Source: Selaginella moellendorffii (lineage: Eukaryota > Plantae > Lycopodiophyta). Taken from it: a stretch of DNA of 64,000 nt. The notes beneath the pieces were generated by a model. It searched no databases. It saw only the letters and a list, made by a program, of their open reading frames with translations, and was not told the DNA's origin. The stretch covers positions 1,354,330 through 1,418,329 of the forward strand of contig NW_003314283.1 of the NCBI RefSeq assembly GCF_000143415.4, given 5' to 3'. How positions within the stretch are numbered: the stretch's first letter is position 1; every line of letters starts with the position of its first letter. Made by a program: the position numbers and the translations under genes. Below are positions 7,016 through 34,042 of this stretch, piece after piece.

Positions 7016-8578
7016 CTAGAGCTTTGACATCATGCTAACCTGCTTGTAGTGGCTGGGTCTGCTGTCTGGATACGTCACAAGCACCATCCTGTAGCCTTCA
7101 CGCTTGAGAAGCAACTGTTGACTCAACTCGAGTTGCTCACAGGCCATTTCTCCGGCATGCACACTTGAACCTCGGATGACTTTGGAGTGGAGGAGCATGA
7201 ACTTGCCATCTGCCAGCTCCACCACCGCGTTGTGCCATGGCGTTGGGATGTGGAAGTTCTTCTCCTCGGAAGAACGCTGGGCTGCCACAAGAGAGGAATG
7301 GATGATGTTGATACCATACTTGGGACCTCGATTTGGATGCGGATGGATGGAGATGCGCAGCTGCAACGGGAAGAGCCACTCCACCATGGCCGAGTATGCA
7401 CGGTTCCTGAGGATCATGAGGAAGGCAACCTGGCTGCACAGCTTCTTCTTGGCCGACTTTGACGGGAGATTCTTGCAACTCTTGTGTTCGTACAAGTCCT
7501 CGAGCATGAACCTGGAGAAGCCACGATAAAGATTGCGTGTCTCCGGGTCATCCTTGATCTCCTTGGTGACAGTTGACTCGTCACAGCCAAACAAGCACAT
7601 GAGAGCTCGCCTGGCATTCTCTGCATTGGCGGTGAGCTCGGTAGCAACAGGATGCTCCACGGTGGTGTTGGAGATGAGCTTCGTAATGCTGTCCTCACTG
7701 TGGTTGTCCAGCAGAAACTCATCCAGGCGAAAGAAATTGACCAAGCCCGGATACAAGTTGTGTGCCATCTCCCAAAACATCTCGCCATAAGAATCCACAG
7801 CAGCGTCGTCCGAGCCGACGAGATCGGAGAAGACATGGCCATCCGAGACGACGTTGTAATGCACGCCTGGAGCATACACGGCCTTGATGAGATCCGCAAC
7901 AATCTTCATGGAATGGATGGCCAGCTCCTCGGCCTTGTCGGGGAACTTTCCCAGAGTCTTGTCGGGATTACACGACTTGACTGGAAATGCCGGCAAGATG
8001 AACTCGAGTGGGATATTTCTTGCGACGTGGTACCTCACCTTGTCCGCAAACCTCTGCTTGCCCCCACTTGTGAACCACTGGTCGTGCTTTGGAAAGTGGA
8101 TGTAATTCCTCTCGATGATGTCCACAATTTGGGAGGTGATATCGTCCACCTCTTGAGGTGTGTGCGAGCTGAAGGACTCCAGGAGGCAATCTCTGGTCAT
8201 GACGCTAGTGTCCAGCAGCAGAGAGGCCAGGTAGCTCATCTCGCTCTCCACTGTGCCCGCGGGATCCTGCATGAAGGCAACGCCCTCGAATCCGTTGCCA
8301 ATATATCTCTCGTAGACAGTGGCTGTCCACTCCTGATCATCTGCTGCTCCAAGCATGGAAATCGTGTATCTGTTGATCTCTGGAGCAATAGACCGTGTGG
8401 CTTGCTTGGCCGCCTCTAAATCTTCTTCTGTGCTCACAACCATGGAGGAAAACATGAAGTCACTACTCTGAGCGGTAGAAACAGGGACATATCTTGACGC
8501 AGACTGTGAGATGAATGCAACCTCGCCATTCTCCCTGTGAATATACAAGAATGCAATCTTGTCCTTGGGATAAGCCAT
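7016..8578 (-). CDS. Isocyanide synthase (DIT1/PvcA family), copy 1, 520 aa, intronless
   Basis: Family motifs LPAFPVKS.N..K.LG..PDKAEELA, SDGHVFSD, RNRAYS, LRISIHPH, KYGI and HIPTPWHN. First ATG is 8578 (MAYPKDK), matching the starts of the paralogs. Confidence 0.9.
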   Translation of the reverse strand: MAYPKDKIAFLYIHRENGEVAFISQSASRYVPVSTAQSSDFMFSSMVVSTEEDLEAAKQATRSIAPEINRYTISMLGAADDQEWTATVYERYIGNGFEGVAFMQDPAGTVESEMSYLASLLLDTSVMTRDCLLESFSSHTPQEVDDITSQIVDIIERNYIHFPKHDQWFTSGGKQRFADKVRYHVARNIPLEFILPAFPVKSCNPDKTLGKFPDKAEELAIHSMKIVADLIKAVYAPGVHYNVVSDGHVFSDLVGSDDAAVDSYGEMFWEMAHNLYPGLVNFFRLDEFLLDNHSEDSITKLISNTTVEHPVATELTANAENARRALMCLFGCDESTVTKEIKDDPETRNLYRGFSRFMLEDLYEHKSCKNLPSKSAKKKLCSQVAFLMILRNRAYSAMVEWLFPLQLRISIHPHPNRGPKYGINIIHSSLVAAQRSSEEKNFHIPTPWHNAVVELADGKFMLLHSKVIRGSSVHAGEMACEQLELSQQLLLKREGYRMVLVTYPDSRPSHYKQVSMMSKL

Positions 8579-9386
8579 GACTCTGAGTTCGTCACTGAGA
8601 AATTCAGGTCGAGCTAAATCGTCAAGTGCCAGTGGTGTGGATCTTAGGAGCCCGAGTCTTTTATACGGGAAAACCAAAGGTTCGTCTATCTTTGACTGAC
8701 GTGATATTTGAAAACGTCTTGTCGAGGGAAGATTCCCTGTAAAGTAACGTCAAAGTCGGCTCCTTCAATGCATGTTTTGTGATAAGCACATTGGATCCTG
8801 CGTATAAAGAATTGCAAAATGAATGTTCTTCGAAGCCAAGATTATGCTTCAAGCTAGAACTAGGTCTCTAGCAAGCGATCACAGTAAAAGTTGTCAAGCA
8901 TTACCGTGTTGCTTGTACCATTTTTGGGAATCATCCTCTTTCGCTATAAGCACGTGTAAAATAGTTTATGCTTGCCTTAAAGGACCATTAGAACCATGCA
9001 AAGTTTTGCAAACACATGGATCCAACGTGCTTATCGCAAAACCATTTGTTTCGAATAAGCAACAGGGATGTCCTGCGTGGGCCATCCCAATGCAATGGAT
9101 AATTCAACGTTCATTCAGCCGAGTAAGTTATGGAAAGTTTTGTAATGCTTCAGATTCAAACTTCCTAGTGTCCAAAAAGATTTTATTTTTCTACCTTACT
9201 GTAGGCCCAAGTATATCTGATATCTCATCTGCGTAAGCTGTAGGATGTCTTAAGCCCTCTTGCTTTGCTAATAAATAAACAACTGCGCAACAACACTGTA
9301 CATTTTGAAACTCTTAGATCTTTCCAATAGCACATTGCCCTAATTTTAGGGTTTCCTAGTGTTAAGCTTCCAAACTCCTGATTTCC
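8579..9386. promoter_or_regulatory. Divergent intergenic/promoter region between ICS copies 1 and 2
   Basis: Head-to-head ATGs ~0.8 kb apart. Minus-strand TATAAAA near 8660, TTGACTGACGTG at 8692-8703, CACGTG at 8951, and a 25-bp inverted repeat at 8774-8798 / 9018-9042. Confidence 0.6.
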
Positions 9387-10932
9387 ATGGCTTTTCCAAA
9401 GGACAAGATTGCGTTCTTGTATATCCAGAAGGAGAATGGCGAGGTGGCATTCATTTCACAGTCTGCCATATGTCCCCCAAGTTGCCACTCAGAAGAGCAG
9501 TAGTGACGAATTCATGTTTTCTTCCATGGTTGCGAGTACAGCAGAAGATCTAGAGGCAGTCAAGCAAGCCACACGCTCAGTGGCCCCAGAGGTGAACAGG
9601 TACACCATTTCCATGCTTGGAGCTGATCCATGCTCCTCGTGGGAAGCCACCATCTACGAGAGATACATTGGGAATGGATTCGAGGGCGTGGTTTTCATCC
9701 AGGAGGAGGATAGCGAGAACATGAAGTATCTGGCCTCTCTGCTGCTGGACAACAGCGTCATGACTAGGGATTGTCTTCTGGAGCCCTTCAGCTCGCACAC
9801 ACCTCAAGAGGTGGACGACATCACCTCGCAAGTTGTGGACATCATAGAGAAGAATTACATCCACTTCCCAAAGCACGACCAGTGGTTCACCAGCGGGGGC
9901 AAGCAGAGGTTCGCGGACAGGGTGAGATATCATGTCGCAAGAAATATCCCACTGGAGTTCATCTTGCCGGCATTTCCAGTCAAGTCGTGCAATCCCGACA
10001 AGACTCTGGGAAAGAGCCCTGACAAGGCCGAGGAGCTGGCCATCCATTCCATGAAGATTGTGGCTGATCTCATCAAAGCCGTGTACGCTCCAGGGGTGCA
10101 CTACAACGTTGTTTCGGATGGCCATGTCTTCTCCGATCTCGTCAGCTCGGACGATGCTGCTGTGGATTCTTATGGCGAGATGTTTTGGGAGATGGCACAC
10201 AACTTGTATCCGGGTTTGGTCAATTTCTTTCGCCTGGATGAGTTTCTGCTGGACAACCACAGTGAGGACAGCATCGCGAAGCTTATTTCTAACACCGATG
10301 TGGACCACCCCGTTGCGACCGAGCTCACCACACATGCAGAGAATGCCAGGCGAGCTCTCATGTGCTTGTTTGGCTGTGACGACTCAACAGTCACCAAGGA
10401 GATCAAGGAGGACCCGGAGACACGCAATCTTTATCGTGGCTTCTCCAGGTTCATGCTCGAGGACTTGTACGAACACAAAAGCTGCAAGAATCTCCCGTCA
10501 AAGTCGGCAAAGAAAAAGTTGTGCAGCCAAGTTGCCTTTCTCACGATCCTCCGCAACCGCGCATACTCGGCCATGGTGGAGTGGCTCTTCCCGTTGCAGC
10601 TGCGCATCTCTATCCACCCGCATCCAAATCGAGGTCCAAAGTATGGCATCAACATCATCCACTCCTCTCTTGTGGCAGCCCAGCATTCTTCTGAGGAGAA
10701 GAACTTCCACATCCCAACACCATGGCACAATACGGTGGTGGAGCTGGCGGATGGCAAGTTCATGCTGCTGCACTCCAAAGTCATCCGAGGTTCGAGTATG
10801 CATACCGGAGAAATGGCCTGTGAGCAACTCGAGTTGAGTCAACAATTGCTTCTCAACCGTGAAGGCTACAGAATGACACTGATGAGATATCCAGACGGCA
10901 GACCCAGCCACTACAGGCAAGTCAGTGTCTAG
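9387..10932 (+). pseudogene. Isocyanide synthase copy 2, with a 5-bp frameshifting deletion near the 5' end
   Basis: Same ATG as copy 4 (MAFPKDK), but AGGAG is missing after position 9467 (length 1546 vs 1551 bp). The downstream frame is intact with all ICS motifs. Confidence 0.82.
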
Positions 10933-11038
10933 AATTGCTCGGATTATATTCTTTTTAGGTCAAATTAAATCAAATTTGAAATAAGTGAATACCATATTTT
11001 ATTTTCCACGTCTTGAATTAGAGTTCTAGATTAGTTTT

Positions 11039-11503
11039 TGTCGCTCCTCGCGACAACACACCAGCGACGTGGAGAATCACTGCTGCCTAGCCTCGTCTCT
11101 AGCCTCGTCAGCGACCTTTGCTAGAACCTCTGCCAACATCCTAACCCAGGGCTGCCCACAAGTTGGACAACTCACACAGATTGGTTGATCTTGAGCAATT
11201 CTCGCTATGATACGCTCCTCCAACAACCGTAGTCGCCGCTGCACTGCCAACCTCCGCTCCACGCACTCCAAGGCTGTTGGACGAGGCATCCTTCCAAGAC
11301 CTTCTCTTTAATTCACTCCCTTCCCTTCTACACACATGCTATGCCTCCAATTGGCCGTCCCCCCTATCGTCAACCTCTGGCACCAAGGGACGCACCCTGT
11401 TTTCAGCAGAATATTCCCTTATTCCCCCCACTATAACCAAAAAGAAGGAAAAAACCCCGACTTGGACCAAGTCTTATTTTTGAGCTAGCTCTGGCCTTCG
11501 ACA
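11039..11503 (-). repeat. 3' LTR
   Basis: TGTCG...CGACA. Differs from 18557-19022 by about 8 substitutions and 1 indel (counted by eye). Confidence 0.95.
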
Positions 11504-11515
11504 TCACCCCGGCAA

Positions 11516-14470
11516 CTATTGTGCTCTGTCCCTGGAGCACTCCTCGCCAGATGGAACTTGGTAGCACTGCAGTTGAGCTCCGTTCACTGGTGTGGGCAAA
11601 GGATTACCAGCAAAATCCTCCAGCTTGACTGAGCCATTGATATTCACAGCCTTCACGCGATAAGGCCCAATCCAGCGGATCTTAAGCTTTCCCGGACGCT
11701 TCCAGTACTTGCTCTCATACAGTAGCACGAGATCTCCTTCCTGAAAACTCTTAGCCCATAAATGACGATCATACCACTTCTTGCGTTGACGTTGGAGAAC
11801 TTCACGGGCTTGGAAAGCAAGGAGGCAAGTCTCATCCAGCTTCTCCAACTGCTCCAGCCGCTGCTGAACAGCTCCATCCCAGTCATAATTGTGAGCTACC
11901 GCTGTCCGCAAAGAAGGAACTTCCAGCTCGAGAGGAAGGATCGCCTCCTGGCCATAAACCAATTGAAATGGTGAGAACCGTGTAGTTACCTTGTAGGCAA
12001 CCCTGTAAGCCCATAACGCATCAAGAAGCTTGGTATCCCAGTCACTAGCACTTGCATTGCAAAGCTTAGTCATGGTGTCGCATAGTGTCTTATTGGTTCT
12101 CTCAACTTGGCCGTTTGCTCTTGGATGATATGGCGTCGAACGTCGATGGGAAATGCCATACTTGGCTGTGAGAGCTGCAATGACCGCATTAATAAAATGC
12201 GTACCTCGATCACTCACAAGCTCAAGTGGGCATCCGAAGCGCGTGATGATATTCTTGTAGAGGAATCCTGCTACCTTCTCTACCGTGTCCTCAGTAAAAG
12301 CCTCAGCTTCCACCCACTTGGTCACATAGTCTGTGCAGACCAAGATATAACAATTCTGGCGATGTCGCGTAGGCTTGAACGGCCCCATGAAGTCGATTCC
12401 CCACTTCTCAAAAGGTAGAGCTGGAATAATCGGATGTAACGGCATTGCATCTCGTCGAGTAGGACGCCCAACACGCTGGCATGGATCACAACTTCTCACA
12501 AATTTCGCCACATCCTGCTGGAGCGTTGGCCACCAATAACCAGTTTGGAGCACAAGCCGTATAGTCGCTGCTGCCGCATAATGCCCACCGTAGGGAGAAT
12601 CATGGCAAGAGCCAATCACCTGCTGCACCTCATGAGGAAGAATGCAGCGCCTCAGAACACCATCTCTTCCCTCCTTATAAAGCTGGCCAGCAATCAGGGT
12701 GAAAGCTCGTGACTGGAAAAGAAGCCTTTTCTGTGCCACCTTCGGCATATCATCAGGAAATCTGCCAGCAGCCAGAAACTCTGCAATACCTTGATACCAC
12801 TCCGGCACAGCTACAACCTGGTATAACAGTAGCTCCTCAGCTTCTGCTCGAGTTGAGAACATAGCTGGAATTTCTGCAGAAACCTGCCCGCCCTCCAACA
12901 AGAAAAGAGGAGCATCGGGCAGCTCATCATAAACTCCTTCCCTGGCAGGTTCTCCTGGTAATCTCGAAAGATGATCAGGCATTACATGAGATTTTCCCAG
13001 CTTCAACACGATCTCGAATTCGAATTCTTGAAGCAGAAGCAACCAGCGAGTGATTCGGCCGTGTCGACAGGGCTTATTGATAAGATAGCGCAGCGCCTGG
13101 TGATCCAGATAGAAGAGGAATGGCTTTCCCAGCAGATAGTGGCGATATTTGGAAATAGCGAACACCATTCCCAAGCCCTCACGTTCAGTGGCTGTATAAT
13201 TCTTCTCAGCCAGAGATAACTGCCTGCTCGAATAAAAGATGGGATGATCCCAACCATTAACTGGCTGGCATAAAACAGCACCAATAGCAAAAGCTGAGGT
13301 GTCGACATGCACATGGAATTTCAAATTCCAGTCTGGTGGCTTAAGAATTGGAGCGGTCGTCAAGGCTCGCTTCAACTGTACAAAGGAAGCTTGGCACTCA
13401 GGGGTCCACGCAAAAGGAACGTTCTTTTTCAAGAGGCCCGTCAAAGGAAAAGCTACATCGGCATAATGCCGGATAAAGCGTCGGTGATAACCAACATGGC
13501 CGAGAAAAGCTTGTAGCTCCCTCACGGTCTGTGGTGCCTCAAGCTCTTCCACTACGTTCACTTTTGCAGGATCCACCTCCAAGCCTCGAGCCGAGACGAC
13601 CCCGCCAAGCAACACGCCGTGCGTTACTCCGAATTGGCACTTCCCAGGATTAAGAGAAATACCAAACTTCCGGCATTGCTGGAACACTGCACGGAGTTGC
13701 TCCAGATGTTTTCCACAGCTTCCAAAAGCTGAGAAGTCATCCAAGAAGACTTCCACACTCTCATGAAGAAGAGATCTGAATGCTGAAGTCACCACACGTT
13801 GGAAAGTAGCCGGTGCGTTCGTCAAACCGAATGGCATAACACGAAAAATATAGCAGCCCCACTCTGTAACGAATGCTGTCTTTGCTCGATCCTCAGGAGC
13901 CACCTGGATCTGGTTATATCCACTATAACCATCCATAAAGCTGTACAACTCCTTCCCTGCGACCCCATCTAGCACCACATCTGTGAAGGGAAGAGGAAAT
14001 CCATCCCGCCTCGTTGCAGCATTAAGGCGGCGATAATCCACGCACACTCTAAGTTTTCCATTCTTCTTCCGGACCACTACAATTGGCAAGAGCCAATCTG
14101 TAGCCTCCACTTCTTCAATAAATCCTGCATCCAACAGCTTCTGAAGCTCTTCACGCACAGCCTTAGCATAGCTTGGATTCATCTTATAAGCTCTTTGCCG
14201 CTGTGGCACTGCATCTGGAAGCAAGGGAATCTTGTGTTGCACCAGCTCCGGATCTACTCCAGCAAGTTCAGCATAGCTCCATGCGAACACATCTCGAAAC
14301 TCCAAAAATAGTTGACAATAAGCTTCCACCTCCTCCTTGGTGAGTTGGTGTCCCACCAGTAACTCACGTCGCTCGTCACCAACCTGCTCCATAAACACAG
14401 CCTGTGTCTGGGGTGCCCTTCCAAAATAATCTGAATCGACTTGAGAACGCCTTGAGTGGAAGATCAGCAA
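11516..14470 (-). CDS. Retrotransposon Pol (RT, RNase H, integrase)
   Basis: LRVCVDYRRLN, DGYSGYNQI, MPFGLTNAPATFQR, VFLDD, RNase H DTSAFAIGAVL, integrase H..H..C..C, GIDFMGPF, SDRGTHF, TPYHPRANGQVE, WIGPY. Out of frame with the upstream protease ORF. Confidence 0.93.
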   Translation of the reverse strand: MLIFHSRRSQVDSDYFGRAPQTQAVFMEQVGDERRELLVGHQLTKEEVEAYCQLFLEFRDVFAWSYAELAGVDPELVQHKIPLLPDAVPQRQRAYKMNPSYAKAVREELQKLLDAGFIEEVEATDWLLPIVVVRKKNGKLRVCVDYRRLNAATRRDGFPLPFTDVVLDGVAGKELYSFMDGYSGYNQIQVAPEDRAKTAFVTEWGCYIFRVMPFGLTNAPATFQRVVTSAFRSLLHESVEVFLDDFSAFGSCGKHLEQLRAVFQQCRKFGISLNPGKCQFGVTHGVLLGGVVSARGLEVDPAKVNVVEELEAPQTVRELQAFLGHVGYHRRFIRHYADVAFPLTGLLKKNVPFAWTPECQASFVQLKRALTTAPILKPPDWNLKFHVHVDTSAFAIGAVLCQPVNGWDHPIFYSSRQLSLAEKNYTATEREGLGMVFAISKYRHYLLGKPFLFYLDHQALRYLINKPCRHGRITRWLLLLQEFEFEIVLKLGKSHVMPDHLSRLPGEPAREGVYDELPDAPLFLLEGGQVSAEIPAMFSTRAEAEELLLYQVVAVPEWYQGIAEFLAAGRFPDDMPKVAQKRLLFQSRAFTLIAGQLYKEGRDGVLRRCILPHEVQQVIGSCHDSPYGGHYAAAATIRLVLQTGYWWPTLQQDVAKFVRSCDPCQRVGRPTRRDAMPLHPIIPALPFEKWGIDFMGPFKPTRHRQNCYILVCTDYVTKWVEAEAFTEDTVEKVAGFLYKNIITRFGCPLELVSDRGTHFINAVIAALTAKYGISHRRSTPYHPRANGQVERTNKTLCDTMTKLCNASASDWDTKLLDALWAYRVAYKVTTRFSPFQLVYGQEAILPLELEVPSLRTAVAHNYDWDGAVQQRLEQLEKLDETCLLAFQAREVLQRQRKKWYDRHLWAKSFQEGDLVLLYESKYWKRPGKLKIRWIGPYRVKAVNINGSVKLEDFAGNPLPTPVNGAQLQCYQVPSGEECSRDRAQ

Positions 14471-16715
14471 CCTGCTCCTTAAAAAAATAGCTGGGATAAT
14501 TTCCTGCTTCCAAATCAGCTGTTGGCACCACGTCCACGGAAAGTTGATGACCAGCTAGATCTTGAGGTCCATTCCCGATCTCAATTAGCTGAGTTGGTGA
14601 TGACTTGAGCATACTACGATCCTTGCATGTTGTCACTTCCTTGCTTTTTAACCTTGAAGCCTTCTCGACTTTCAGCATGTAAGAAAAGTGATAATCAAAT
14701 GCACTGATATCAGACAAGATGATTGTCCGATATCGATGATTATCATCTTCCACCACCAGAGTACCAGTCACATAGTCGTGACTAGCCTGTACCTGGAAAA
14801 GCCAAGCTGCTCCCAAAGTAACTGGTACGCTGGTCACAGTGCCCTCGATCACATAAAAAGGCACCTCGTGAAAGTCTCCCTCACCAATCACCATGTTGGA
14901 ACTCACGAGACCCAGCACTGGAAAAACTCCACCATCGGCACAAACGGCAATGTAATGCTCAGGAAGAGCTGTAATCGCCAAGCTTGCTTGAGCTGCTCCA
15001 TCTTTTGTCAAAAAGTTGCCAAGTGCTCCTGGATCCACCATTGCTGTGAGTTCCACATTCTCCAAAGATGCTGTGAGATGCATCGCTTTGGTTCCTCCCA
15101 TCCAAACCTCAGAACTGTCCACTGTCTGGAACGCCACTGCCATTGGCATAGCTTGATTTTCAGCTCTTGATTCCAACACCGTGATAAAAACTTGCTCTCT
15201 GGGCTCGTCCCCTTCTTCCATGCCGATCTGCACTCTGTCACTGCCATGTGGATTTGGAATCCACAAGTGAAGCGGATCATTCCACTGATGAGACACTCTT
15301 GCTGCCTTTAAGAAATCTTGTCCTAGCAGGATATAGTTGTCCATTTTCCAAGGTGCCACCAGAAAATCCAAGTCGACTGGAAATTCTGGTATCTTGATTG
15401 TCAAACCTGGAACTCTATATACTATCCGCTTCAACTCCCCTGCTCGCATAGCCCAACATGGCTGCTCCACTGGAATAGCTTCGAACTGGCAAGTGGCAAC
15501 TAGTTCCTCGCTCAAAAAATTGTTCCACACATCAGGATTCAAAATGCCGTCCATCCACTTCTCGTGTAGCACCGTAGCGATGTAGCGAGGAAAAGGGCTC
15601 CGTCCTCGCCACTGTCTGGCACCAGTCTCTTCTTCCACCACCTGTACGCTGCCGAAAGGCAACTCTCCATCCTTTCCCCACAGCCAGCTCTCAAGCTCCT
15701 CAGTGTTGCATGCCGAAAGAGGCTTACCCCAGGAATTCTTGGTGATAGCAGCCACATCCACCATTTCTAGCTCCTCACAACTGGCTGTGCTGCTGCTATC
15801 CTCCTCATCGTCCTCACTGCTTGTCTGGCTACTAGAATTGGATGTATCAGAGCTGTCTTCATCCTCCTGTTCTGCCCCAAGTACTCGCCGTGCCCTATGG
15901 CGAAAATGAACTTGGACTTTAACACGATTATTGCCATCGCCAATGGCAAGAATTCCTGTACGCCAATTATGCACAGCTGCCGCCTGGAGAAGCCAAGGAC
16001 GTCCGAGCAGCAGTGGATAGCCCAACATGCCCTCCTTCATCCTCAAAACCACGAAATCGATGTGGAAAACTAGACCAGCAATCTGAGTGCGAACACTGGT
16101 CACGATTCCTCTTGGCTGGACACGTCTCTGGTCGGCCATTTTAACCATAAATGGCACTGGAACTGGTTCTGGAAGATTGAACTTTCGCCAGGTCTCCTCA
16201 GGCAAAATATTCACCCCACTTCCACCATCGATCACAGCACGACGGATCAGCTCGCCTTGCGTCTCCACATCTATACAAGGGGAACTGAGATCTGTGATAA
16301 GGGGCCAAGCTGAATTAACCAGTACTTCTCGATGTCCCTTCATGGCCACGGCCAACACCTTCCTCATGCCTGGAGCCAATTGCAAAAGCTGGGCGAATGT
16401 GATGTTCGGGCGTTGACTATCCAAGTCTTGAAGAATATTGTACGACTGCGTTTCCAGATTCAGCACTCGTTTCCACTTTTTACGTAGCGCCTTGGCAACT
16501 CCCTGGCCCTTGTCAAGAGCCCTAGCTGGGGTAGTTATTTCAGAATCAGGGACTGGTTTATCTTGGTCATTTGTAGCCGGTGGATCTGATTTGGGCTGCT
16601 TGCTCTCTCTTTTCTCCTTGCGGTTCTTTCTTGCAATTTTCTCTGGGTCATCCTTTTCCTCAGCATCCTCAATTACAGAGTTCTCCATCTGTTGACGCCT
16701 CCATGCCCGTGTCAT
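14376..16715 (-). CDS. Retrotransposon protease region with repeated retropepsin-like domains
   Basis: AVIDGGSGVN...LLLGRPWL, then DLDFLV...ILLGQDFL, then AMVDPGALGNF...VTLGAAWL. Confidence 0.75.
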   Translation of the reverse strand: MTRAWRRQQMENSVIEDAEEKDDPEKIARKNRKEKRESKQPKSDPPATNDQDKPVPDSEITTPARALDKGQGVAKALRKKWKRVLNLETQSYNILQDLDSQRPNITFAQLLQLAPGMRKVLAVAMKGHREVLVNSAWPLITDLSSPCIDVETQGELIRRAVIDGGSGVNILPEETWRKFNLPEPVPVPFMVKMADQRRVQPRGIVTSVRTQIAGLVFHIDFVVLRMKEGMLGYPLLLGRPWLLQAAAVHNWRTGILAIGDGNNRVKVQVHFRHRARRVLGAEQEDEDSSDTSNSSSQTSSEDDEEDSSSTASCEELEMVDVAAITKNSWGKPLSACNTEELESWLWGKDGELPFGSVQVVEEETGARQWRGRSPFPRYIATVLHEKWMDGILNPDVWNNFLSEELVATCQFEAIPVEQPCWAMRAGELKRIVYRVPGLTIKIPEFPVDLDFLVAPWKMDNYILLGQDFLKAARVSHQWNDPLHLWIPNPHGSDRVQIGMEEGDEPREQVFITVLESRAENQAMPMAVAFQTVDSSEVWMGGTKAMHLTASLENVELTAMVDPGALGNFLTKDGAAQASLAITALPEHYIAVCADGGVFPVLGLVSSNMVIGEGDFHEVPFYVIEGTVTSVPVTLGAAWLFQVQASHDYVTGTLVVEDDNHRYRTIILSDISAFDYHFSYMLKVEKASRLKSKEVTTCKDRSMLKSSPTQLIEIGNGPQDLAGHQLSVDVVPTADLEAGNYPSYFFKEQVADLPLKAFSSRFRLFWKGTPDTGCVYGAGW

Positions 16716-18551: not shown

Positions 18552-18556
18552 AAAGA

Positions 18557-23446: not shown

Positions 23447-24997
23447 ATGGCTTTTCCAAAGGACAAGATTGCGTTCTTGTATATCCAGAAGGAGAATGGC
23501 GAGGTGGCATTCATTTCACAGTCTGCCAGGAGATATGTCCCCCAAGTTGCCACTCAGAAGAGCAGTAGTGACGAATTCATGTTTTCTTCCATGGTTGCGA
23601 GTACAGCAGAAGATCTAGAGGCAGTCAAGCAAGCCACAGGCTCCATTGCTCCAGAGATCAATAGATACACCATTTCCATGCTTGGAGCTGATTCATGCTC
23701 TTCGTGGGAAGCCACCGTCTACGAGAGATACATTGGGAATGGATTCGAGGGCGTGGTTTTCATCCAGGAGGAGGATAGCGAGAACATGAAGTATCTGGCC
23801 TCTCTGCTGCTGGACAACAGCGTCATGACTAGGGATTGTCTTCTGGAGCCCTTCAGCTCGCACACACCTCAAGAGGTGGACGACATCACCTCGCAAGTTG
23901 TGGACATCATAGAGAAGAATTACATCCACTTCCCAAAGCACGACCAGTGGTTCACCAGCGGGGGCAAGCAGAGGTTCGCAGACAGGGTGAGATATCATGT
24001 CGCAAGAAATATCCCACTGGAGTTCATCTTGCCGGCATTTCCAGTCAAGTCGTGCAATCCCGACAAGACTCTGGGAAAGAGCCCTGACAAGGCCGAGGAG
24101 CTGGCCATCCATTCCATGAAGATTGTGGCTGATCTCATCAAAGCCGTGTACGCTCCAGGGGTGCACTACAACGTTGTTTCGGATGGCCATGTCTTCTCCG
24201 ATCTCGTCAGCTCGGACGATGCTGCTGTGGATTCTTATGGCGAGATGTCTTGGGAGATGGCACACAACTTGTATCCGGGTTTGGTCAATTTCTTTCGCCT
24301 GGATGAGTTTCTGCTGGACAACCACAGTGAGGACAGCATCGCGAAGCTTATTTCTAACACCGATGTGGACCACCCCGTTGCGACCGAGCTCACCACACAT
24401 GCAGAGAATGCCAGGCGAGCTCTCATGTGCTTGTTTGGCTGTGACGACTCAACAGTCACCAAGGAGATCAAGGAGGACCCGGAGACACGCAATCTTTATC
24501 GTGGCTTCTCCAGGTTCATGCTCGAGGACTTGTACGAACACAAAAGCTGCAAGAATCTCCCATCAAAGTCGGCAAAGAAAAAGTTGTGCAGCCAGGTTGC
24601 CTTCCTCATGATCCTCAGGAACCGCGCATACTCGGCCATGGTGGAGTGGCTCTTCCCGTTGCAGCTGCGCATCTCCATCCACCCACATCCAAATCGAGGT
24701 CCAAAGTATGGCATCAACATCATCCACTCCTCTCTTGTGGCAGCCCAGCATTCTTCCGAGGAGAAGAACTTCCACATCCCAACACCATGGCACAATACGG
24801 TGGTGGAGCTGGCGGATGGCAAGTTCATGCTCCTCCACTCCAAAGTCATCCGAGGTTCAAGTGTGCATGCCGGAGAAATGGCCTGTGAGCAACTCGAGTT
24901 GAGTCAACAGTTGCTTCTCAAGCGTGAAGGCTACAGGATGGTGCTTGTGACGTATCCAGACGGCAGACCCAGCCACTACAGGCAAGTCAGTGTCTAG
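23447..24997 (+). CDS. Isocyanide synthase (DIT1/PvcA family), copy 4, 516 aa, intronless
   Basis: Complete ATG-to-stop ORF with all ICS motifs (LPAFPVKS, SDGHVFSD, RISIHPH, HIPTPWHN). Confidence 0.9.
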   Translation: MAFPKDKIAFLYIQKENGEVAFISQSARRYVPQVATQKSSSDEFMFSSMVASTAEDLEAVKQATGSIAPEINRYTISMLGADSCSSWEATVYERYIGNGFEGVVFIQEEDSENMKYLASLLLDNSVMTRDCLLEPFSSHTPQEVDDITSQVVDIIEKNYIHFPKHDQWFTSGGKQRFADRVRYHVARNIPLEFILPAFPVKSCNPDKTLGKSPDKAEELAIHSMKIVADLIKAVYAPGVHYNVVSDGHVFSDLVSSDDAAVDSYGEMSWEMAHNLYPGLVNFFRLDEFLLDNHSEDSIAKLISNTDVDHPVATELTTHAENARRALMCLFGCDDSTVTKEIKEDPETRNLYRGFSRFMLEDLYEHKSCKNLPSKSAKKKLCSQVAFLMILRNRAYSAMVEWLFPLQLRISIHPHPNRGPKYGINIIHSSLVAAQHSSEEKNFHIPTPWHNTVVELADGKFMLLHSKVIRGSSVHAGEMACEQLELSQQLLLKREGYRMVLVTYPDGRPSHYRQVSV

Positions 24998-25140
24998 AAT
25001 TGCTCGGATTATATTCTTTTTAGGTCAAATGGGTAAAGCACCCAGCCCTTACATCAAATTTGAAATAAGTGAATACAATATTTTATTTTGAATTAAATGG
25101 TTTTTCCAATGGGAAATCCAATGGGAAATGGACGACGCCG

Positions 25141-26869
25141 CAGGTGGATTGGGGCGAAACTCTTCGACTGCCAGAAGAAGTGCAGGGCTTTCTACTTGGA
25201 AGGTCAACTTTCACTTCCTGTAGCTAATGACTGCTACTCTTCCGGATTGGTCAGTCGGATTATTCCCACCGTGCTCAACTTAAAGAGCAGCTCGAGAAGG
25301 CTGAAAGTATAGGCCGCCGTTGCGTTATTGTCTCCGGTGCCTATGGATGCGGGTTTTCTGTGTAAGTAACTGCAAATACTTCATAATGACTTGCATGAGA
25401 TAGATTTTATTTCGTTGTCGCTGGTAACGGTGGGTCTCAAGATCTCGAACACTTAATCACCTTGGTGAAGACCGAAAGCTTTTTGTTTTGTGCTCCATAC
25501 CTGGAGCTGTCAAGGCACCGAAGGAAAGCCTTGAAGAGTTCGCCTTACCATCGTCCAGGTGCTTATGACGTTGCTACTGGCCTGTAGAATGAAGATTTAC
25601 CTCTACCGCAAGAGCAAGGGGATCATGTCGCGGCAGTGGCTGCCATGCAAAGTCTAGTACATCCTCTACTGCCTTTTACGAGTTTTTCAGGAGCGTGGTG
25701 ATGAAGTTCTGATGTGGGATCTCAGTTGGAGCCCGCCCTACGCTAACTCGCCTCGGTACCCATACCAACTATTGCTCTTGAAGGAAGCGATGCTCAACGA
25801 GGGCTACAAGTATTGGTCGACGTCAAGGGGTGGCTACGTGCCTCTTGCACACAGCCTGGAAGATGCCTGCAGAGTGGATGCAAGTCGAAAGCATGTAGTC
25901 CTACTCTCAGGCACAGGGTACGTATTGGACTTCGAGCTTATGGCAGATACCGACTTTATGAACTTTGGCATCTGGAAGAGCTCCTCAGAGATGGTAAGCT
26001 ATGCTGGACAGGCTATAGAACTAACAGAAGAGGAGGAAGCGGACTTGTGGAGCATGGATAAAGTTTTTTGAGGAAAGTTTCAGCCACTGGCATCTGTTTT
26101 GGAAATCATGATCTTTAAGGACGTGAGCCTGCGGGAGGCCGCTGCTTATGTCACTGTGGGGAGTTAAGTCAGCCAATGAAGATATTCACGTTCTATGATG
26201 GGGTTTCCATGTTGGGGGAGACGGAAGGCATTGCCCATGGAGTAAATCTCATTGAGGAACTCGAGACGGTTGTAGTGCAATACTTCTGTGCTGGAGAGGG
26301 CTGCGTTTTCAGGGGCAACAAGGCTGCATTGTCTGGGGCTGGCCTGGGATGGACAGCTGCGGGGTTTAGTGTTCACCTGGATGAGTATCTGGCTCTTGCT
26401 GCACCCAGGAGCCACTTTCAATATCAATACCAGGCAAAGGGATTTTTGCGGAGTTCCTACCTGCAATGAAAGTGGTTGCGGTTGTCAACTGTTGTGCCTT
26501 TCCCGGGTTTGTGCCTGAAGAACTTGGTAGCTCTATCACTCGAGAACATAAATACGGGGGAAAGATGGAGACATGCCACTTATCAGACCGCTGCTGAAGG
26601 CTAACGGCTGCCCTCAAGCGTTTGAAGAGGAAGGGTCGAGTCATGAAAGGCTGGATGGATGCATGCGTTTTAATGTCGACGACTCAGAAGTCTTTCTTGC
26701 GGATGAAGCAATCTGCACAACATGGATCTCAGGAGAAAACACTACAGTGCAAGGCATCCGATCTGAAAGGGATGAAGTTCCGGAGGTGTATATGAGTTAC
26801 AAAGCCACTGGCTCGACTGAGCTTGTGAAGACCGGTTCTGACGCAAGATTTCTACTTAAGGGATTTTAA
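25141..26869 (+). pseudogene. Degenerate coding region of unknown family (copy B)
   Basis: Paralog of 19069-20830. ORF pieces at 25712-26071, 26176-26469 and 26573-26869. Confidence 0.5.
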
Positions 26870-29800
26870 CTTAAACCTATCATACATAAGCACTGATTTT
26901 GCTCGTTGCCGATGCTCATGAAAGATTAACATGGGTCATTTTTTTATTAGCTTGAAAATTAATTCTAGAGACCCTGTAAAAGCAAAGTGTTCAAACTATC
27001 AAAAGCTTGCCACCAAAAAGAAGAATAAATGGCAAGAAAGACCAAAGAAAGACAGAAGGATGATTTGTATAAATTGAATTTTGTAAATGCTAGAGTGTAT
27101 TTCTGCCACCATTATCCATAATGACATTTGAATCTAAACCTAAGACTTTATAGATTAAATTTCTAAATTAGTTTAAGCTTGGACTAAATTAATTCTAAAA
27201 ACAGAGTTTCTAGGACTTTATGTCCAACATCCTTTGTCCATTTTCAATACTTTTTGTCATGTGTTCTTCTTTTTACAACGAGCTTTTTCAACACTCTCTG
27301 ATTGATGGCTTTTCCTATCAAGCATTGGAGTAATCAAACACAGCTATTCACTTATAATTCTAATTGTCAAGTGCTCTTTATTGATGAAAGTGGATTCTAC
27401 AAAACTATTAATCAAATATCAAAATAATGAAGAAAAATGAATTTGTATTAAATAGTCAAAGTACAAAATTATCAAAACCTTAATTTTATGGCTCTAAAAG
27501 TAGCACGACGTTCACACGTGTCGTCTTTCTGGCCTATAGCCAGCAATCTACAGCAACTCGCATTACTTTTTGTGATATAATCCAACCCTCAGTAATGATA
27601 AAAATCCACTTTAATAAAAACTGGCAAATATGTGACATCAATGGCTGCCATAATCTAATATTATAAGATTAAACCCACTTCTCCCTCTAAATGTGCCAAT
27701 TTTGAGGATTTTTTGATAAGAAGAGAGATAATGTTTTGCATCACAATTTATAACCATTCCATCAATTTTAAAAAGAGAAAATTACCACCATTTGATCCCA
27801 CTTACAATCTTTCATCAACTAAGTGGAAGTATTATGTACATATATTAAAGAGAATCTTTCTATTCAACATTCTTAATCTTTAGCTGATGCATTTGTTTTC
27901 TTTGTATCTAAGAAGGATGGGTTATTTTGTTTGGTGGTTGATTATTGTAACTTGAATATAATAATTATCTTTAATCAATATTTACTTTCAGTCTTTTTTG
28001 AGATGTTAGAGTGGCTCTTAATAAAAGCTCAGTTCTTCATTGGAAAATTGATGTATGTAGCATTTAAAACATCTGGATAATAAGTGAAATTAAACTTTTC
28101 ATACTTATTATGGATATTTTGAATATATGATGATACCTTTTTGTTTGATCAATATACATGTTACTTTTCAATATATGGCAAATAACATTTTCTCTGATTT
28201 CTTTAATTTCTTCATTATCATTTATCTTGATGACATTCTCATTTTCTTTGAGACTTAATAAGAACATGATTGTCATGTTCACTTTATTCTTCAATGCCTT
28301 TAATAACACTACCGTTTTGCAAAGTTGGAGAAATATATTTTCAATCAAGATTCTGTGGAGTTTTTAAGTTTTATTATTTCCTTACATAGCATCATCATGG
28401 ATTTTATTGAGTGGTAATGCCTAACCTTTATTCATGATATCTAATATTTATTTAGGTTTATAAATTTTTATTAGTAATGGTTTATTTGAAGCTTCTCCAA
28501 AATCACTTTTCAACCTTTAATATTAGACTATTTTTGTATTTAAATCATTTTTTTTTTGTAAAATTCTCTACCTCTTGATCATTTACTAATATGTTAACTT
28601 TTGCATAGACACAGTTAAGTTTAAAAAATCTCCTAACCTTAATACCCATTGTTATATTTCTTACATAATTGTTCTAAGAAGTTAATATCATAATAGCTGT
28701 CTAATAGACAATAAAGTATGTCTTAAGCTAGAAAGATAAAAAAAAACTTCACAAATATTAACAATAAGGCCGCCAATACTTTTAACTTCAGTAGGCAATC
28801 CACTAGTTTGTGCTATTAAATCTTGATAATCCTTAAAATCTGAAAACATGGTTTATTGCAACTAAATCCAGCTATAGAGGTGGATTATTCACAATAAAAA
28901 CATGATATGTCATAAATACTACAGATTAGCAATATTTTTTATGTTATTAATCAGGCTTGGTTCTTAAAATAATAATTGCATTTGAAACTTATCATTTTCA
29001 TGATGTTATTATCATTAAATTATTAATTGTCATCTTCTTGTGATTGCTAGGGTGAAAGATATGCTTCCAATATGACTCCAAATAGATCCTCTTTAATTGT
29101 TCAAACTATTATCAAGTTTAATCAATTCAGAAAGAATTTACTCAAATGTCTTACAATTTGAAATTGACTAAAAACTTCATAAGCATATTCATCACGTAGT
29201 TCATTCTTAAAAGTTACAAGATTAGTTTTACCATCTTTATTACCAATAACAATTTAATTATCTTATGCAGTCTTGCTCAAATCCAAGTGACTGTGATAAA
29301 TCTTTAGCCCTCTACCACAAGAATTCTAAGGGCTTTGATCTCATGCTTTAATATCACAATAGAATTTTGAAAGAATCCATCAATAACATCTCACAAATTC
29401 TTTTAGATACAAGTGAGTGGAAATCTACCAATTATGAAAAACAATATTATTATAATGACAAAGATATAATGTTCATAAAAAAAAGAAGCTAAAGCAACAG
29501 AAAACAAGCTAATGGAATTTTAACTAATTTAACTCTTTACATTCTTATTGGTTTTGTAGGACGCAGTAACAGTAGAGTCAACAATGTGACAGTTAGTGCA
29601 TCTCAAAAAAGTAAAATAGACATTGTTGTATCTTAGGGTAATGTTGGTTTGGTGTAGAATATGATTGGTGCATTTTAACTTGATGACACCTTTTAGAATG
29701 AATTATAGAGTTGTTCAAGATAGACAATCTTTTCAGAGATTTATGTGTGAGTCACACATACATTACAAAGGATAGTTTCATGTCATTGAATCAACATTTA

Positions 29801-32330: not shown

Positions 32331-32434
32331 TTCGAACCGCAACTTGAGAGACCTGGAAATGGCAAAATCATCTTCTCCTCCAAGCCCTAAAAATGTTTTA
32401 TTTCAAAATTGCATGGGCCAGCATTTGGCACAAT

Positions 32435-34042
32435 TCAGCAGACGCTGACCTGCTTGTAGTGGCTGGGTCTACCGTCTGGGTATCTCACCAGTGTCATTCT
32501 GTAGCCTTCACGCTTGAGAAGCAACTGTTGACTCAACTCGAGTTGCTCACAAGCCATTTCTCCGGCATGCACACTTGAACCTCGGATGACTTTGGAGTGC
32601 AGCANNNNNNNNNNNNNNNNNNNNNNNNNNNNNNNNNNNNNNNNNNNNNNNNNNNNNNNNNNNNNNNNNNNNNNNNNNNNNNNNNNNNNNNNNNNNNNNN
32701 NNNNCGTTGGGATGTGGAAGTTCTTCTCCTCGGAAGAACGTTGGGCTGCCACAAGAGAGGAATGGATGATGTTGATACCATACTTGGGACCTCGATTTGG
32801 ATGCGGATGGATGGAGATGCGCAGCTGCAACGGGAAGAGCCACTCCACCATGGCCGAGTATGCACGGTTCCTGAGGATCATGAGGAAGGCAACCTGGCTG
32901 CACAGCTTCTTCTTGGCCGACTTTGACGGGAGATTCTTACAACTCTTGTGTTCGTACAAGTCCTCGAGCATGAACCTGGAGAAGCCACGATAAAGATTGC
33001 GTGTCTCCGGGTCATCCTTGATCTCCTTGGTGACAGTTGACTCGTCACAGCCAAACAAGCACATGAGAGCTCGCCTGGAATTCTCTGCATTGGCGGTGAG
33101 CTCGGTAGCAACAGGATGCTCCACGGTGGTGTTGGAGATAAGCTTTGCGATGCTGTTCTCGCTGTGGTTGTCCAGCAGAAACTCATCCAGGCGAAAGAAA
33201 TTGACCAAGCCCGGATACAAGTTGTGTGCCATCTCCCAAAACATCTCGCCATAAGAATCCACAGCAGCATCGTCCGAGCCGACGAGATCAGAGAAGACAT
33301 GGCCATCCGAGGCGACGTTGTAGTGCACGCCTGGAGCATACACGGCCTTGATGAGATCCGCAACAATCTTCATGGAATCGATGGCCAGCTCCTCGGCCTT
33401 GTCCGGGCACTTTCCCAGAGTCTTGTCGGGATTGCACGACTTGACTGGAAATGCGGGCAAGACGAACTCGAGTGGAATGTTTCTTGCGACGTGGTACCTC
33501 ACCTTGTCCGCAAACCTCTGCTTGCCCCCACTTGTGAACCACTGGTCGTGCTTTGGAAAGTGGATGTAATTCCTCTCGATGATGTCCACAATTTGGGAGG
33601 TGATATCGTCCACCTCTTGAGGTGTGTGCGAGCTGAAGGGCTCCAGAAGACAATCCCTAGTCATGACGCTGTTGTCCAGCAGCAGAGAGGCAAGATACTT
33701 CATGTTCTCGCTATCCTCCTCCTGGATGAAAACCACGCCCTCGAATCCATTCCCAATGTATCTCTCGTAGACGGTGGCTTCCCACGAAGAGCATGAATCA
33801 ACTCCAAGCATGGAAATGGTGTATCTGTTGATCTCTGGAGCAACGGAGCGTGTGGCTTGCTTGGCCGCCTCTAAATCTTCTGCTGTGCTTGCAACCATGG
33901 AGGAAAACGTGAATTCCTCACTGGTGCTCTTCCGAGTGGCAACTTGGGGGACATATCTCCTGGCAGACTGTGAGATGAAGGGAACCTCGCCATTCTCCTT
34001 GTGGATATACAAGAACGCAATCTTGTCCTTTGGAAAAGCCAT
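32435..34042 (-). CDS. Isocyanide synthase (DIT1/PvcA family), copy 5, spanning an assembly gap
   Basis: MAFPKDK start and all ICS motifs up to HIPT. The 100-N gap replaces about 15 codons. C-terminus is intact. Confidence 0.85.
   Translation of the reverse strand: MAFPKDKIAFLYIHKENGEVPFISQSARRYVPQVATRKSTSEEFTFSSMVASTAEDLEAAKQATRSVAPEINRYTISMLGVDSCSSWEATVYERYIGNGFEGVVFIQEEDSENMKYLASLLLDNSVMTRDCLLEPFSSHTPQEVDDITSQIVDIIERNYIHFPKHDQWFTSGGKQRFADKVRYHVARNIPLEFVLPAFPVKSCNPDKTLGKCPDKAEELAIDSMKIVADLIKAVYAPGVHYNVASDGHVFSDLVGSDDAAVDSYGEMFWEMAHNLYPGLVNFFRLDEFLLDNHSENSIAKLISNTTVEHPVATELTANAENSRRALMCLFGCDESTVTKEIKDDPETRNLYRGFSRFMLEDLYEHKSCKNLPSKSAKKKLCSQVAFLMILRNRAYSAMVEWLFPLQLRISIHPHPNRGPKYGINIIHSSLVAAQRSSEEKNFHIPTXXXXXXXXXXXXXXXXXXXXXXXXXXXXXXXXXXLHSKVIRGSSVHAGEMACEQLELSQQLLLKREGYRMTLVRYPDGRPSHYKQVSVC
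32605..32704. other. Assembly gap (100 N)
   Basis: Run of N inside ICS copy 5. Confidence 1.

What the first reader, a model, noticed from the sequence alone, without database searches (positions are those of the whole stretch)
7016..34042. Five-member isocyanide synthase (DIT1/PvcA) array in a land-plant genome: candidate plant isonitrile pathway of microbial origin
Seen: five intronless paralogs (7016-8578, 9387-10932, 22323-22637, 23447-24997, 32435-34042) carry the ICS motif set LPAFPVKSxN, LGxxPDKAE, SDGHVFSD, RISIHPH, KYGI, HIPTPWHN (copy 3 is only the N-terminal part). Copy 1 ends ~290 bp from the intron-containing NRPB12 with no gap between them, and a plant LTR element sits inside the array. 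Established: PvcA/IsnA/XanB/CrmA-type enzymes convert an amino acid's amine to an isocyanide using ribulose-5-phosphate, and yeast Dit1 of the same family makes the precursor of spore-wall N,N'-bisformyl dityrosine. The family is characterised in bacteria and fungi, and isonitrile biosynthesis is not a recognised plant pathway. Inference: the long N-terminal extension and the SIHxHxNxGPKxGI...HIPTPWHN tail look closer to fungal Dit1-type enzymes than to PvcA. With the lack of introns, this suggests fungus-to-plant horizontal transfer followed by local amplification. Possible roles are metal-chelating antimicrobial defence or spore-wall chemistry. No transit peptide is apparent, so the enzymes are probably cytosolic.
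Basis: partly seen in the sequence, partly recalled or inferred. Interest (0 to 1): 0.95.

Follow-up and report, generated by a model that had tools for sequence, protein, structure and literature searches.

The report
Fungal-type isocyanide synthase genes in spikemoss
This stretch of the spikemoss Selaginella moellendorffii genome holds a locally duplicated, transcribed cluster of genes for a Dit1-type isocyanide synthase, an enzyme family otherwise found in fungi and bacteria; the genes most likely came from a chytrid-like fungus and may give this plant isonitrile or N-formyl-tyrosine chemistry.

Summary
The window carries three intact DIT1_PvcA genes (c1, c4, and c5, which has an assembly gap), one frameshifted copy (c2) and one truncated copy (c3). 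They sit among ordinary plant genes, with a Ty3/gypsy LTR retrotransposon inside the array.

- **Genome and family:** the genome is Selaginella moellendorffii (GCA_000143415.2). It has at least six more intact family members elsewhere, and NCBI already names them "spore wall maturation protein DIT1".
- **Origin:** full-length collinearity, shared terminal motifs and trees place the plant clade (100/100) inside the eukaryotic, fungal-type clade, next to chytrids. The exact branching is unresolved.
- **New here:** the two earliest-branching Selaginella paralogs keep one GT..AG intron at exactly the position and phase of an intron shared by chytrid and ascomycete Dit1 genes. The intronless coding sequences in this window are therefore a secondary loss, not a sign of transfer.
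- **Function:** c5 is transcribed with two spliced 5'UTR introns. dN/dS among paralogs is 0.11-0.30. The predicted fold matches PvcA and PIsnA at Z about 33.
- **Gap:** one RNA contig bridges the gap with exactly the 46 letters predicted from paralogs, but its far side resembles another copy.
- **Partners and product:** no Dit2-type P450 or TauD-type partner lies nearby, and the product is unknown.
- **Earlier work:** the scan had already reported this family on other DNA of the same genome.

The parts
7016..8578 (-). c1: intact Dit1-type isocyanide synthase gene, 520 aa, no intron in the coding sequence
   Evidence: ORF. PF05141 at E=4e-83. dN/dS against other copies is 0.14-0.30.
9387..10932 (+). 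c2: copy with a 5-nt deletion after codon 27 (about 9468). The frame is restored only from the internal ATG at 9436 (public model P0001, 498 aa). It is either N-terminally altered or a pseudogene.
   Evidence: tblastn match split across two frames. DNA alignment A2. 97.2% nt identity to c4.
22320..22637 (-). c3: truncated from the start. It holds only the first ~318 nt of a c1-like gene, because the breakpoint of the segmental duplication lies inside c1 (at 8262).
   Evidence: Self-BLAST: 8262-10965 matches 22320-25030 at 96.2%; c1-c3 identity 98.7%. Translation diverges after ~135 aa. No Pfam hit.
23447..24997 (+). c4: intact gene, 516 aa. Used as the query, and as the sequence modelled, in the homology searches and the structure prediction.
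   Evidence: AF2 model with pLDDT 80.6. Z=32-33 to PvcA and PIsnA.
32435..34042 (-). c5: intact apart from the assembly gap at 32605-32704, which stands for about 46 nt. Transcribed.
   Evidence: RNA contigs at 100% identity over 33615-34192 in three runs from three studies; a gap-bridging contig with 46 letters. The far side of that contig resembles c1/c4.
34043..34398 (-). c5 5' leader: exon 34043-34192, intron 34193-34248 (56 nt), exon 34249-34327, intron 34328-34385 (58 nt), exon from 34386. It runs into the 3' end of the upstream gene.
   Evidence: Spliced joints with CT..AC on the plus strand (GT..AG on the minus strand) in RNA runs X1, X2 and X4. Sequence read.
8262..10965 (.). Duplication unit A, first part: 5' end of c1, the shared divergent promoter region, and c2. 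It continues at 19191-21428 beyond the retrotransposon.
   Evidence: Self-BLAST: 96.2% to 22320-25030; 19191-21428 matches 25232-27502 at 89.5-91.5%.
22320..27502 (.). Duplication unit B: c3, intergenic region, c4 and downstream sequence. It has no retrotransposon (empty site).
11039..19022 (-). Ty3/gypsy LTR retrotransposon, inserted into unit A after the duplication.
   Evidence: Pfam gag, protease, RT, RNase H and integrase domains. LTRs 98.07% identical. TG..CA ends and GTTTT target-site duplication at 11034-11038 and 19023-19027.
6357..6665 (+). RPB12/RPABC4-like gene with an intron, convergent with c1. It anchors the array to plant DNA.
   Evidence: PF03604 at E=1.8e-14. Translation.

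Best explanation
The region is one of several loci of a Selaginella moellendorffii gene family that encodes Dit1-type (fungal-type) isocyanide synthase-family enzymes.

**Origin.** The family most likely descends from a single old acquisition of an intron-containing gene from an early-diverging, chytrid-like fungus. It then spread through the genome. Synonymous divergence (dS) between the deepest paralogs is about 1.

**History of this locus.**
- A divergent gene pair (c1 and c2) was duplicated as a block of about 5 kb. The breakpoint lay inside c1, so the duplicate consists of c3 (truncated from the start) plus c4.
- A Ty3/gypsy element later inserted into the first block.
- c2 acquired a 5-nt frameshift.
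- c5 is a further copy. Its transcripts carry two spliced 5'UTR introns.
- The subfamily of seven genes that includes the window copies lost the single ancestral coding-sequence intron.

**Function (inferred).** The proteins have an N-terminal PAS-like domain and a PvcA/PIsnA-like catalytic domain, with every residue that is invariant across the fungal sequences retained. By homology they are expected to condense the amino group of an aromatic amino acid, probably L-tyrosine, with a carbon from ribulose-5-phosphate in the cytosol. The product would be an alpha-isocyano acid, which may persist or hydrate to N-formyl tyrosine.

**Shown versus inferred.** Shown here: family membership, fold, expression of c5, purifying selection, the structure of the array, and the shared intron position. 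Inferred: the donor, the timing, the substrate, the product and the biological role.
For: **Family and fold**
- PF05141 at E about 1e-83.
- Sequence matches to solved isonitrile synthases 9DHM/9DH4 (E=3e-28) and PvcA 3E59.
- The AF2 model aligns to them at Z=32-33, rmsd 2.2-2.6 A, over 301-311 residues.

**Real plant genes**
- The flanks hold kinase, RPB12, THF dehydrogenase, PPR and PC-esterase genes.
- Other paralogs lie on five further scaffolds of 0.64-4.1 Mb, and those with gene calls around them sit among plant genes.
- GC3 is 0.67, against 0.62-0.82 for neighbouring plant genes.

**Fungal source**
- The best non-plant hits are chytrids at 43-49% identity over the full length. Bacteria reach 28-34%, over the catalytic domain only.
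- The N-terminal [YF]PKD..F.Y motif, SIHPH, SDGHVFSDL and the C-terminal DGRPSHY[RK] motif are shared with chytrids.
- In the careful tree the eukaryotic clade has 100/100 support against bacteria, and Selaginella is monophyletic at 100/100. Selaginella plus chytrids is the best topology (59/84 in the careful tree; SH-aLRT 88-91 in the quick trees).
- P0005 and P0006 have one 57/55-nt GT..AG intron, phase 1, directly after SDGHVFSDL. Introns in three chytrids and in Colletotrichum sit at the same position and phase.

**Restricted distribution**
- In the exhaustive 1.84-billion-representative search, every hit above 50% identity is S. moellendorffii.

**Functional genes**
- dN/dS is 0.11-0.30.
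- c5 transcripts are present at 100% identity, with spliced leaders, in three RNA runs.

**Chemistry lead**
- Phycomyces, which encodes a Dit1-like protein, makes tyrosine isonitrile (PMC13005658).
Against: - The AU test does not reject a tree with all fungi together and Selaginella outside them (p=0.086). Nesting within fungi, and therefore the donor, is not proven.
- The shared intron would also fit very old common ancestry.
- I could not query other Selaginella species or other lycophytes directly. The 50% clustering of the representative library could hide their orthologs. The 90%-cluster search showed none.
- No enzymatic or metabolite data exist. Yeast Dit1 is reported not to act as an isocyanide synthase in vivo (PMC7345447).
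- No partner P450 or dioxygenase lies nearby.
- Only c5 was checked for expression.
Confidence: 0.75

Rival explanations
1. Vertical inheritance. The gene is an ancient eukaryotic gene kept in fungi and, among plants, only in the Selaginella lineage, and lost everywhere else.
For: The AU test does not reject fungi as one clade with Selaginella outside (p=0.086). The backbone of the careful tree is a polytomy. The shared intron position is compatible with common ancestry.
Against: This needs losses in all other sampled plants and algae. No hit above 50% identity exists outside S. moellendorffii among 1.84 billion representatives or in the 5.8-billion-cluster search. The best trees group Selaginella with chytrids rather than outside fungi. 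Derived N- and C-terminal motifs are shared specifically with chytrids.
Confidence: 0.08
2. The enzymes are Dit1-like N-formyl-tyrosine synthases that feed a cross-linked dityrosine-type wall polymer, for example in spores, rather than making free isonitrile metabolites.
For: The nearest characterised relatives are the fungal dit family: the Colletotrichum homolog sits beside a P450 and a DJ-1 gene. Yeast Dit1 is cytosolic and gives N-formyl tyrosine, and PvcA cannot replace it (PMC7345447). NCBI names the plant genes after DIT1.
Against: No Dit2-type P450, DJ-1 or transporter gene lies in the window or within 10 kb of five other paralogs. The chytrid relatives also lack a neighbouring P450. 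A family of about ten genes looks more like specialised metabolism. Phycomyces, which encodes a Dit1-like protein, releases a stable tyrosine isonitrile (PMC13005658).
Confidence: 0.25
3. The array consists of decaying relics of a transfer and has no present function.
For: c2 is frameshifted and c3 is a fragment. Several degenerate family members exist elsewhere: P0007, P0009, P0014 and P0048.
Against: c1, c4 and c5 have full open frames. dN/dS is 0.11-0.30 even for recent pairs. All columns invariant across the fungal sequences are kept. c5 is transcribed and spliced.
Confidence: 0.05
4. Contamination or a chimeric assembly, or a direct bacterial origin.
For: The family is otherwise microbial, and there is an assembly gap inside c5.
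Against: Plant genes and a plant LTR retrotransposon with a target-site duplication lie on both sides and inside the array. RNA contigs splice the c5 leader with plant-sized 56-58-nt introns and run into the neighbouring plant gene. An independent 2024 DNA run covers the region. Paralogs lie on six scaffolds. Bacteria form a separate clade at 100/100 and lack the N-terminal domain.
Confidence: 0.01

Closest known systems
Chytrid Dit1-like proteins (Blyttiomyces, Cladochytrium, Phlyctochytrium, Powellomyces, Geranomyces)
   Same: They align over the full length at 36-49% identity. They share the N-terminal [YF]PKD..F.Y motif, SIHPH, SDGHVFSDL and the C-terminal DGRPSHY motif. They share the phase-1 intron after SDGHVFSDL.
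   Different: The chytrid genes examined have two to four introns. They sit beside an OPT transporter, usually with AMP-binding and beta-lactamase-fold genes and, in Geranomyces, an NRPS-like gene. The plant genes have one intron or none, and none of these neighbours. Selaginella has LPAFPVKSCN where fungi have LPAFPCKSSN.
Saccharomyces cerevisiae Dit1 and the ascomycete dit cluster (Dit1, Dit2/CYP56, Dtr1)
   Same: Same Pfam family and two-domain layout, at 29-31% identity. Yeast Dit1 is a cytosolic, tyrosine-modifying enzyme (PMC7345447).
   Different: No Dit2-type P450 or transporter lies next to any plant copy. Ascomycete proteins have SIHAH and SDGHVFSDC and lack the DGRPSHY tail. The plant family has about ten members, not one.
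Bacterial isonitrile synthases PvcA (3E59), PIsnA (9DH4/9DHM) and IsnA
   Same: The catalytic domain has the same fold (Z=32-33, 28-30% identity over about 300 residues) and the same core motifs. These enzymes make tyrosine- or tryptophan-derived isonitriles with ribulose-5-phosphate as the carbon donor (PMC7949033 abstract).
   Different: The bacterial enzymes are about 300-350 aa and lack the ~135-residue PAS-like N-terminal domain. By established knowledge they work with an Fe/2OG partner (PvcB/IsnB), which is not seen here. They form a separate clade at 100/100.

Membership tests
DIT1_PvcA / isocyanide synthase family (PF05141) | Pfam profile match above the gathering score | tested here: met
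   279.5 and 275.1 bits against a cut-off of 26.4, covering profile positions 1-266 of 273.
DIT1_PvcA / isocyanide synthase family (PF05141) | PvcA/PIsnA fold of the catalytic domain | tested here: met
   AF2 model (pLDDT 80.6) against 3E59 and 9DH4/9DHM: Z=32.2-32.9, rmsd 2.2-2.6 A, 301-311 residues aligned; Foldseek TM 0.84-0.87.
DIT1_PvcA / isocyanide synthase family (PF05141) | Conserved core motifs (LPAFPxKSxN, PDxxE, SDGHVF, LYRxxxRF, R[IL]SIHP, KxGI, TPWH) | tested here: met
   All are present in c1 and c4. 58 columns are invariant across 25 plant and fungal sequences. The motifs are shared with PIsnA in the HMMER alignment.
DIT1_PvcA / isocyanide synthase family (PF05141) | Forms an isonitrile (or N-formyl product) from an amino acid and ribulose-5-phosphate | not testable with these tools
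   Needs an enzyme assay.
Fungal Dit1-type subfamily | N-terminal extension of about 130-180 residues before the catalytic domain, collinear with fungal Dit1 | tested here: met
   Alignment from residue 1 with chytrid proteins, 99% query coverage for P0013 and P0015. Predicted PAS-like fold for residues 1-131, Z about 10-11.
Fungal Dit1-type subfamily | Groups with fungal rather than bacterial sequences in a rooted tree | tested here: met
   The eukaryotic clade has 100/100 support against 5 bacterial outgroups.
Fungal Dit1-type subfamily | Shared intron positions with fungal genes | tested here: met
   The phase-1 intron after SDGHVFSDL is in P0005 and P0006 and in Powellomyces, Phlyctochytrium, Geranomyces and Colletotrichum. 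The window copies have lost it.
dit gene cluster (Dit1 + Dit2/CYP56 + Dtr1) | Adjacent P450 (Dit2) and/or transporter | tested here: not met
   No P450 appeared among the window ORFs scanned. tblastx with the Colletotrichum dit2 and DJ-1 genes and with the chytrid neighbour genes found nothing in the window or in five other Selaginella loci. Gene tables of those loci show no P450 or MFS gene.
Bacterial ICS operon (PvcA/IsnA + PvcB/IsnB) | Adjacent TauD-type Fe/2OG dioxygenase | tested here: not met
   None in the window. Only plant DOXC-type 2OG oxygenases lie 4-9 kb from paralog P0005.

The most novel reading that the evidence does not exclude
Selaginella moellendorffii uses a fungus-derived, expanded Dit1-type enzyme family to make tyrosine-derived (or other aromatic) isonitriles. 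To my knowledge, and in the papers searched here, this would be the first isonitrile biosynthetic route described in a land plant. The compounds might serve in metal binding or antimicrobial defence.
Probability: 0.35. Interest if true: 0.8.

Novelty: new member of a known kind. Interest (0 to 1): 0.6.

Why it matters
Isonitrile natural products and Dit1/PvcA enzymes are known from bacteria and fungi. To my knowledge, and in the papers searched here, none has been described from a land plant.

A transcribed family of about ten genes under purifying selection in a model lycophyte makes the question directly testable: does a plant make isonitriles or N-formyl-tyrosine compounds with an enzyme taken from a fungus?

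The retained fungal intron position is an unusually concrete trace of eukaryote-to-eukaryote transfer of genomic DNA. The locus also records step by step how a transferred gene is domesticated: amplification, intron loss, gain of 5'UTR introns, and death of individual copies.

Tried and rejected
**Literature.** Seven searches for any paper linking Selaginella or lycophytes with DIT1, isocyanide synthase, PF05141 or dityrosine found nothing relevant. A search for "PIsnA" found no structural paper, so I could not check named catalytic residues.

**Conserved partner genes.**
- The unnamed ~575-aa genes upstream of P0005 and P0006 are not homologous to each other.
- The BAHD transferases near P0003 and P0006 are only distantly related.
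- Fungal cluster neighbours have no counterpart near any plant copy.

**Closer donor.** No unnamed environmental sequence was a closer sister to the plant clade; the added representatives joined the chytrids or other fungi.

**Fungal monophyly.** The AU test for rejecting it was inconclusive (p=0.086).

**Upstream gene of c5.** It gave no Pfam hit on the pieces tried.

Full report
**1. What is in the sequence**

- c1 (7016-8578, minus strand, 520 aa) and c4 (23447-24997, plus strand, 516 aa) are intact. They hit Pfam PF05141 at E=4e-83 and 9e-82.
- c5 (32435-34042, minus strand) is intact apart from the 100-N gap.
- c2 (9387-10932, plus strand) is 97% identical to c4 but has a 5-nt deletion after codon 27. 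The original frame is broken. The public model (P0001, 498 aa) starts at an internal ATG at 9436.
- c3 is only the first ~318 nt of a c1-like gene (98.7% to c1). After that its ORF runs into unrelated sequence.

**2. The gap**

The flanks of the gap at 32605-32704 correspond to positions that lie 46 nt apart in every paralog. Both 46 and 100 leave remainder 1 mod 3, so the frame appears preserved.

One RNA contig (run X2) bridges the gap with exactly 46 inserted letters. It has no mismatch over 268 nt on the 5' side, but 12 mismatches in 161 nt on the stop-codon side, and its 3' end is unlike the window. With the listed substitutions applied, that side is closer to c1 and c4 (96.9%) than to c5 (93.8%).

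The gap size and frame are therefore supported. Continuity of this exact copy is not proven. The contig may be a graph chimera between paralogs or may come from another allele.

**3. Context and history of the array**

The array lies among ordinary plant genes:

- CAP-Gly gene (1330-1728)
- protein kinase gene (5609-6169)
- RPB12-type zinc ribbon gene with an intron (6357-6665, PF03604, E=1.8e-14)
- THF dehydrogenase gene (38860-39300)
- PPR gene (50094-52844)
- PC-esterase gene (54595-55449)

.

Self-comparison shows that 8262-10965 matches 22320-25030 at 96.2%, and 19191-21428 matches 25232-27502 at 89.5-91.5%. One block, made of the 5' end of c1, the divergent promoter region, c2 and downstream sequence, was duplicated to give c3 plus c4. 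Because the breakpoint lies inside c1, c3 was truncated from the start rather than decayed.

A Ty3/gypsy element (11039-19022) sits only in the first block. It has gag, protease, RT, RNase H and integrase domains, LTRs 98.07% identical, TG..CA ends and a GTTTT target-site duplication. It therefore inserted after the duplication.

**4. Whose genome, and how big is the family**

The window's own protein and the other top hits lie on scaffolds of assembly GCA_000143415.2, Selaginella moellendorffii.

Intact paralogs elsewhere are:

- P0002, present as two identical copies 14 kb apart on GL377593
- P0003
- P0004
- P0005
- P0006

Degenerate models also exist: P0007, P0009, P0014 and P0048. NCBI already names several of these genes "spore wall maturation protein DIT1".

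I found no paper that discusses them. The scan itself had already reported the family on other pieces of this genome, with the same reading.

**5. Origin**

*Sequence similarity.* After Selaginella, the best hits are chytrid fungi at 43-49% identity, and some align from residue 1 to the end. Ascomycetes follow. Bacterial homologs reach 28-34% and cover only residues ~180-515. Alignment A1 shows features shared with chytrids but not with ascomycetes: the N-terminal [YF]PKD..F.Y motif, SDGHVFSDL, SIHPH and a C-terminal DGRPSHY[RK] motif.

*Trees.* In a careful ML tree (47 rows, LG+C20 PMSF) rooted on five bacterial sequences:

- the eukaryotic clade has 100/100 support;
- the nine Selaginella rows are monophyletic at 100/100, on a long stem (0.94);
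- Selaginella plus chytrids is the best topology but is weakly supported (59/84).

The quick trees give that grouping SH-aLRT 88-91. An AU test does not reject fungi as one clade with Selaginella outside (p=0.086).

*Gene structure, an independent line of evidence.*

- The two earliest-branching plant paralogs, P0005 and P0006, each have one canonical GT..AG intron (57 and 55 nt), phase 1, immediately after SDGHVFSDL. Read-through gives in-frame stops.
- Exact splice mapping shows an intron at the same position and phase in Powellomyces, Phlyctochytrium, Geranomyces and the ascomycete Colletotrichum.
- Two further intron positions (before RNxAYS, and after SIH) are shared by two of the three chytrids mapped, the ascomycete Colletotrichum and the basidiomycete Violaceomyces.

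The plant family therefore descends from a fungal-type, intron-containing gene. The clade of seven intronless genes that includes this window (support 97/96) lost the intron later.

*Distribution.* In an exhaustive HMMER scan of 1.84 billion representatives, every hit above 50% identity is S. moellendorffii.

*Conclusion.* A single fungus-to-plant transfer is the most economical reading. dS of about 0.9-1.1 between the deepest paralogs shows it is not recent. The exact donor lineage and the date remain open.

**6. Are the genes alive?**

Pairwise dN/dS is 0.11-0.30 among window copies and 0.12-0.20 against distant paralogs.

Runs X1, X2 and X4 behave as RNA. They show spliced joints and no intergenic cover. 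They carry contigs at 100% identity over 33615-34192, including the c5-specific leader.

That leader is spliced twice, with introns at 34193-34248 and 34328-34385, both GT..AG on the minus strand. It continues into a 3 x 38-nt tandem repeat that holds the stop codon of the upstream multi-exon gene. c5 transcripts therefore either start in, or read through from, the 3' end of that gene.

Expression of c1, c2 and c4 was not tested.

**7. How it probably works**

The AF2 model (pLDDT 80.6) has two parts.

- Residues ~139-514 superpose on PvcA and on PIsnA, solved with L-tyrosine and with an isonitrile product, at Z=32-33.
- Residues 1-131 adopt a PAS/LOV-like fold: Z=10-11, rmsd 2.2-3.3 A, 95-118 residues aligned.

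All columns invariant across the fungal sequences are retained. The N-terminus aligns with the chytrid N-terminus without any extension, which argues against an added transit peptide.

By homology, the enzymes should couple an aromatic amino acid, probably tyrosine, with ribulose-5-phosphate to give an isocyano acid or its hydration product, N-formyl tyrosine. The literature is split on Dit1-type enzymes:

- Yeast Dit1 is reported to give formyl tyrosine and not to be replaceable by PvcA (PMC7345447).
- Phycomyces, which encodes a Dit1-like protein, releases a stable tyrosine isonitrile (PMC13005658).

No partner gene is conserved next to the plant copies, so downstream chemistry is unknown.

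**8. Verdict**

The "plant isonitrile pathway" remains a testable hypothesis.

The enzyme kind is known and the genes are already named in public annotation. I therefore file the finding as a new member of a known kind in an unexpected host.

Noticed in passing
window 34403-34516 (minus strand): Three tandem copies of a 38-nt unit. They contain the stop codon (34484-34486) of the upstream gene and lie in the c5 leader. A DNA contig skips 76 nt (two units), which suggests a copy-number polymorphism. RNA contigs break here.
   Followed up: partly
window 34484 to beyond 36297 (minus strand): A multi-exon plant gene directly upstream of c5, with 48-58-nt introns and a transcript of about 2.8 kb. 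It has no Pfam hit on the pieces tried. Its 3' end overlaps c5 transcripts.
   Followed up: partly
L084, L085, L091 (Powellomyces, Phlyctochytrium and Geranomyces loci): The chytrid Dit1-like genes share a neighbourhood with an OPT oligopeptide transporter. Two of the three also have AMP-binding and beta-lactamase-fold genes, and Geranomyces has an NRPS-like gene. This may be a chytrid isocyanide gene cluster. It has no P450.
   Followed up: no
c4 protein residues 1-131 (window 23447-23839): The N-terminal extension typical of Dit1-type proteins is predicted to fold like a PAS/LOV domain (Z=10-11 to many PAS structures). No Pfam family covers it.
   Followed up: partly
L081/L082 (scaffold GL377593.1, about 1.750 and 1.764 Mb): Paralog P0002 occurs as two identical protein copies 14 kb apart, a second very recent local duplication of the family.
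   Followed up: no
L086 15331-20999: Two plant DOXC-type 2OG-Fe(II) oxygenase genes lie 4-9 kb downstream of the intron-bearing paralog P0005. This is probably coincidence, but it is the only oxygenase neighbourhood seen.
   Followed up: no
window 28000-30000, 44000-46000, 58000-62000: Blocks with G+C of only 0.27-0.28, against about 0.5 elsewhere. A short internal repeat lies at 61968-62336. None of these was examined.
   Followed up: no
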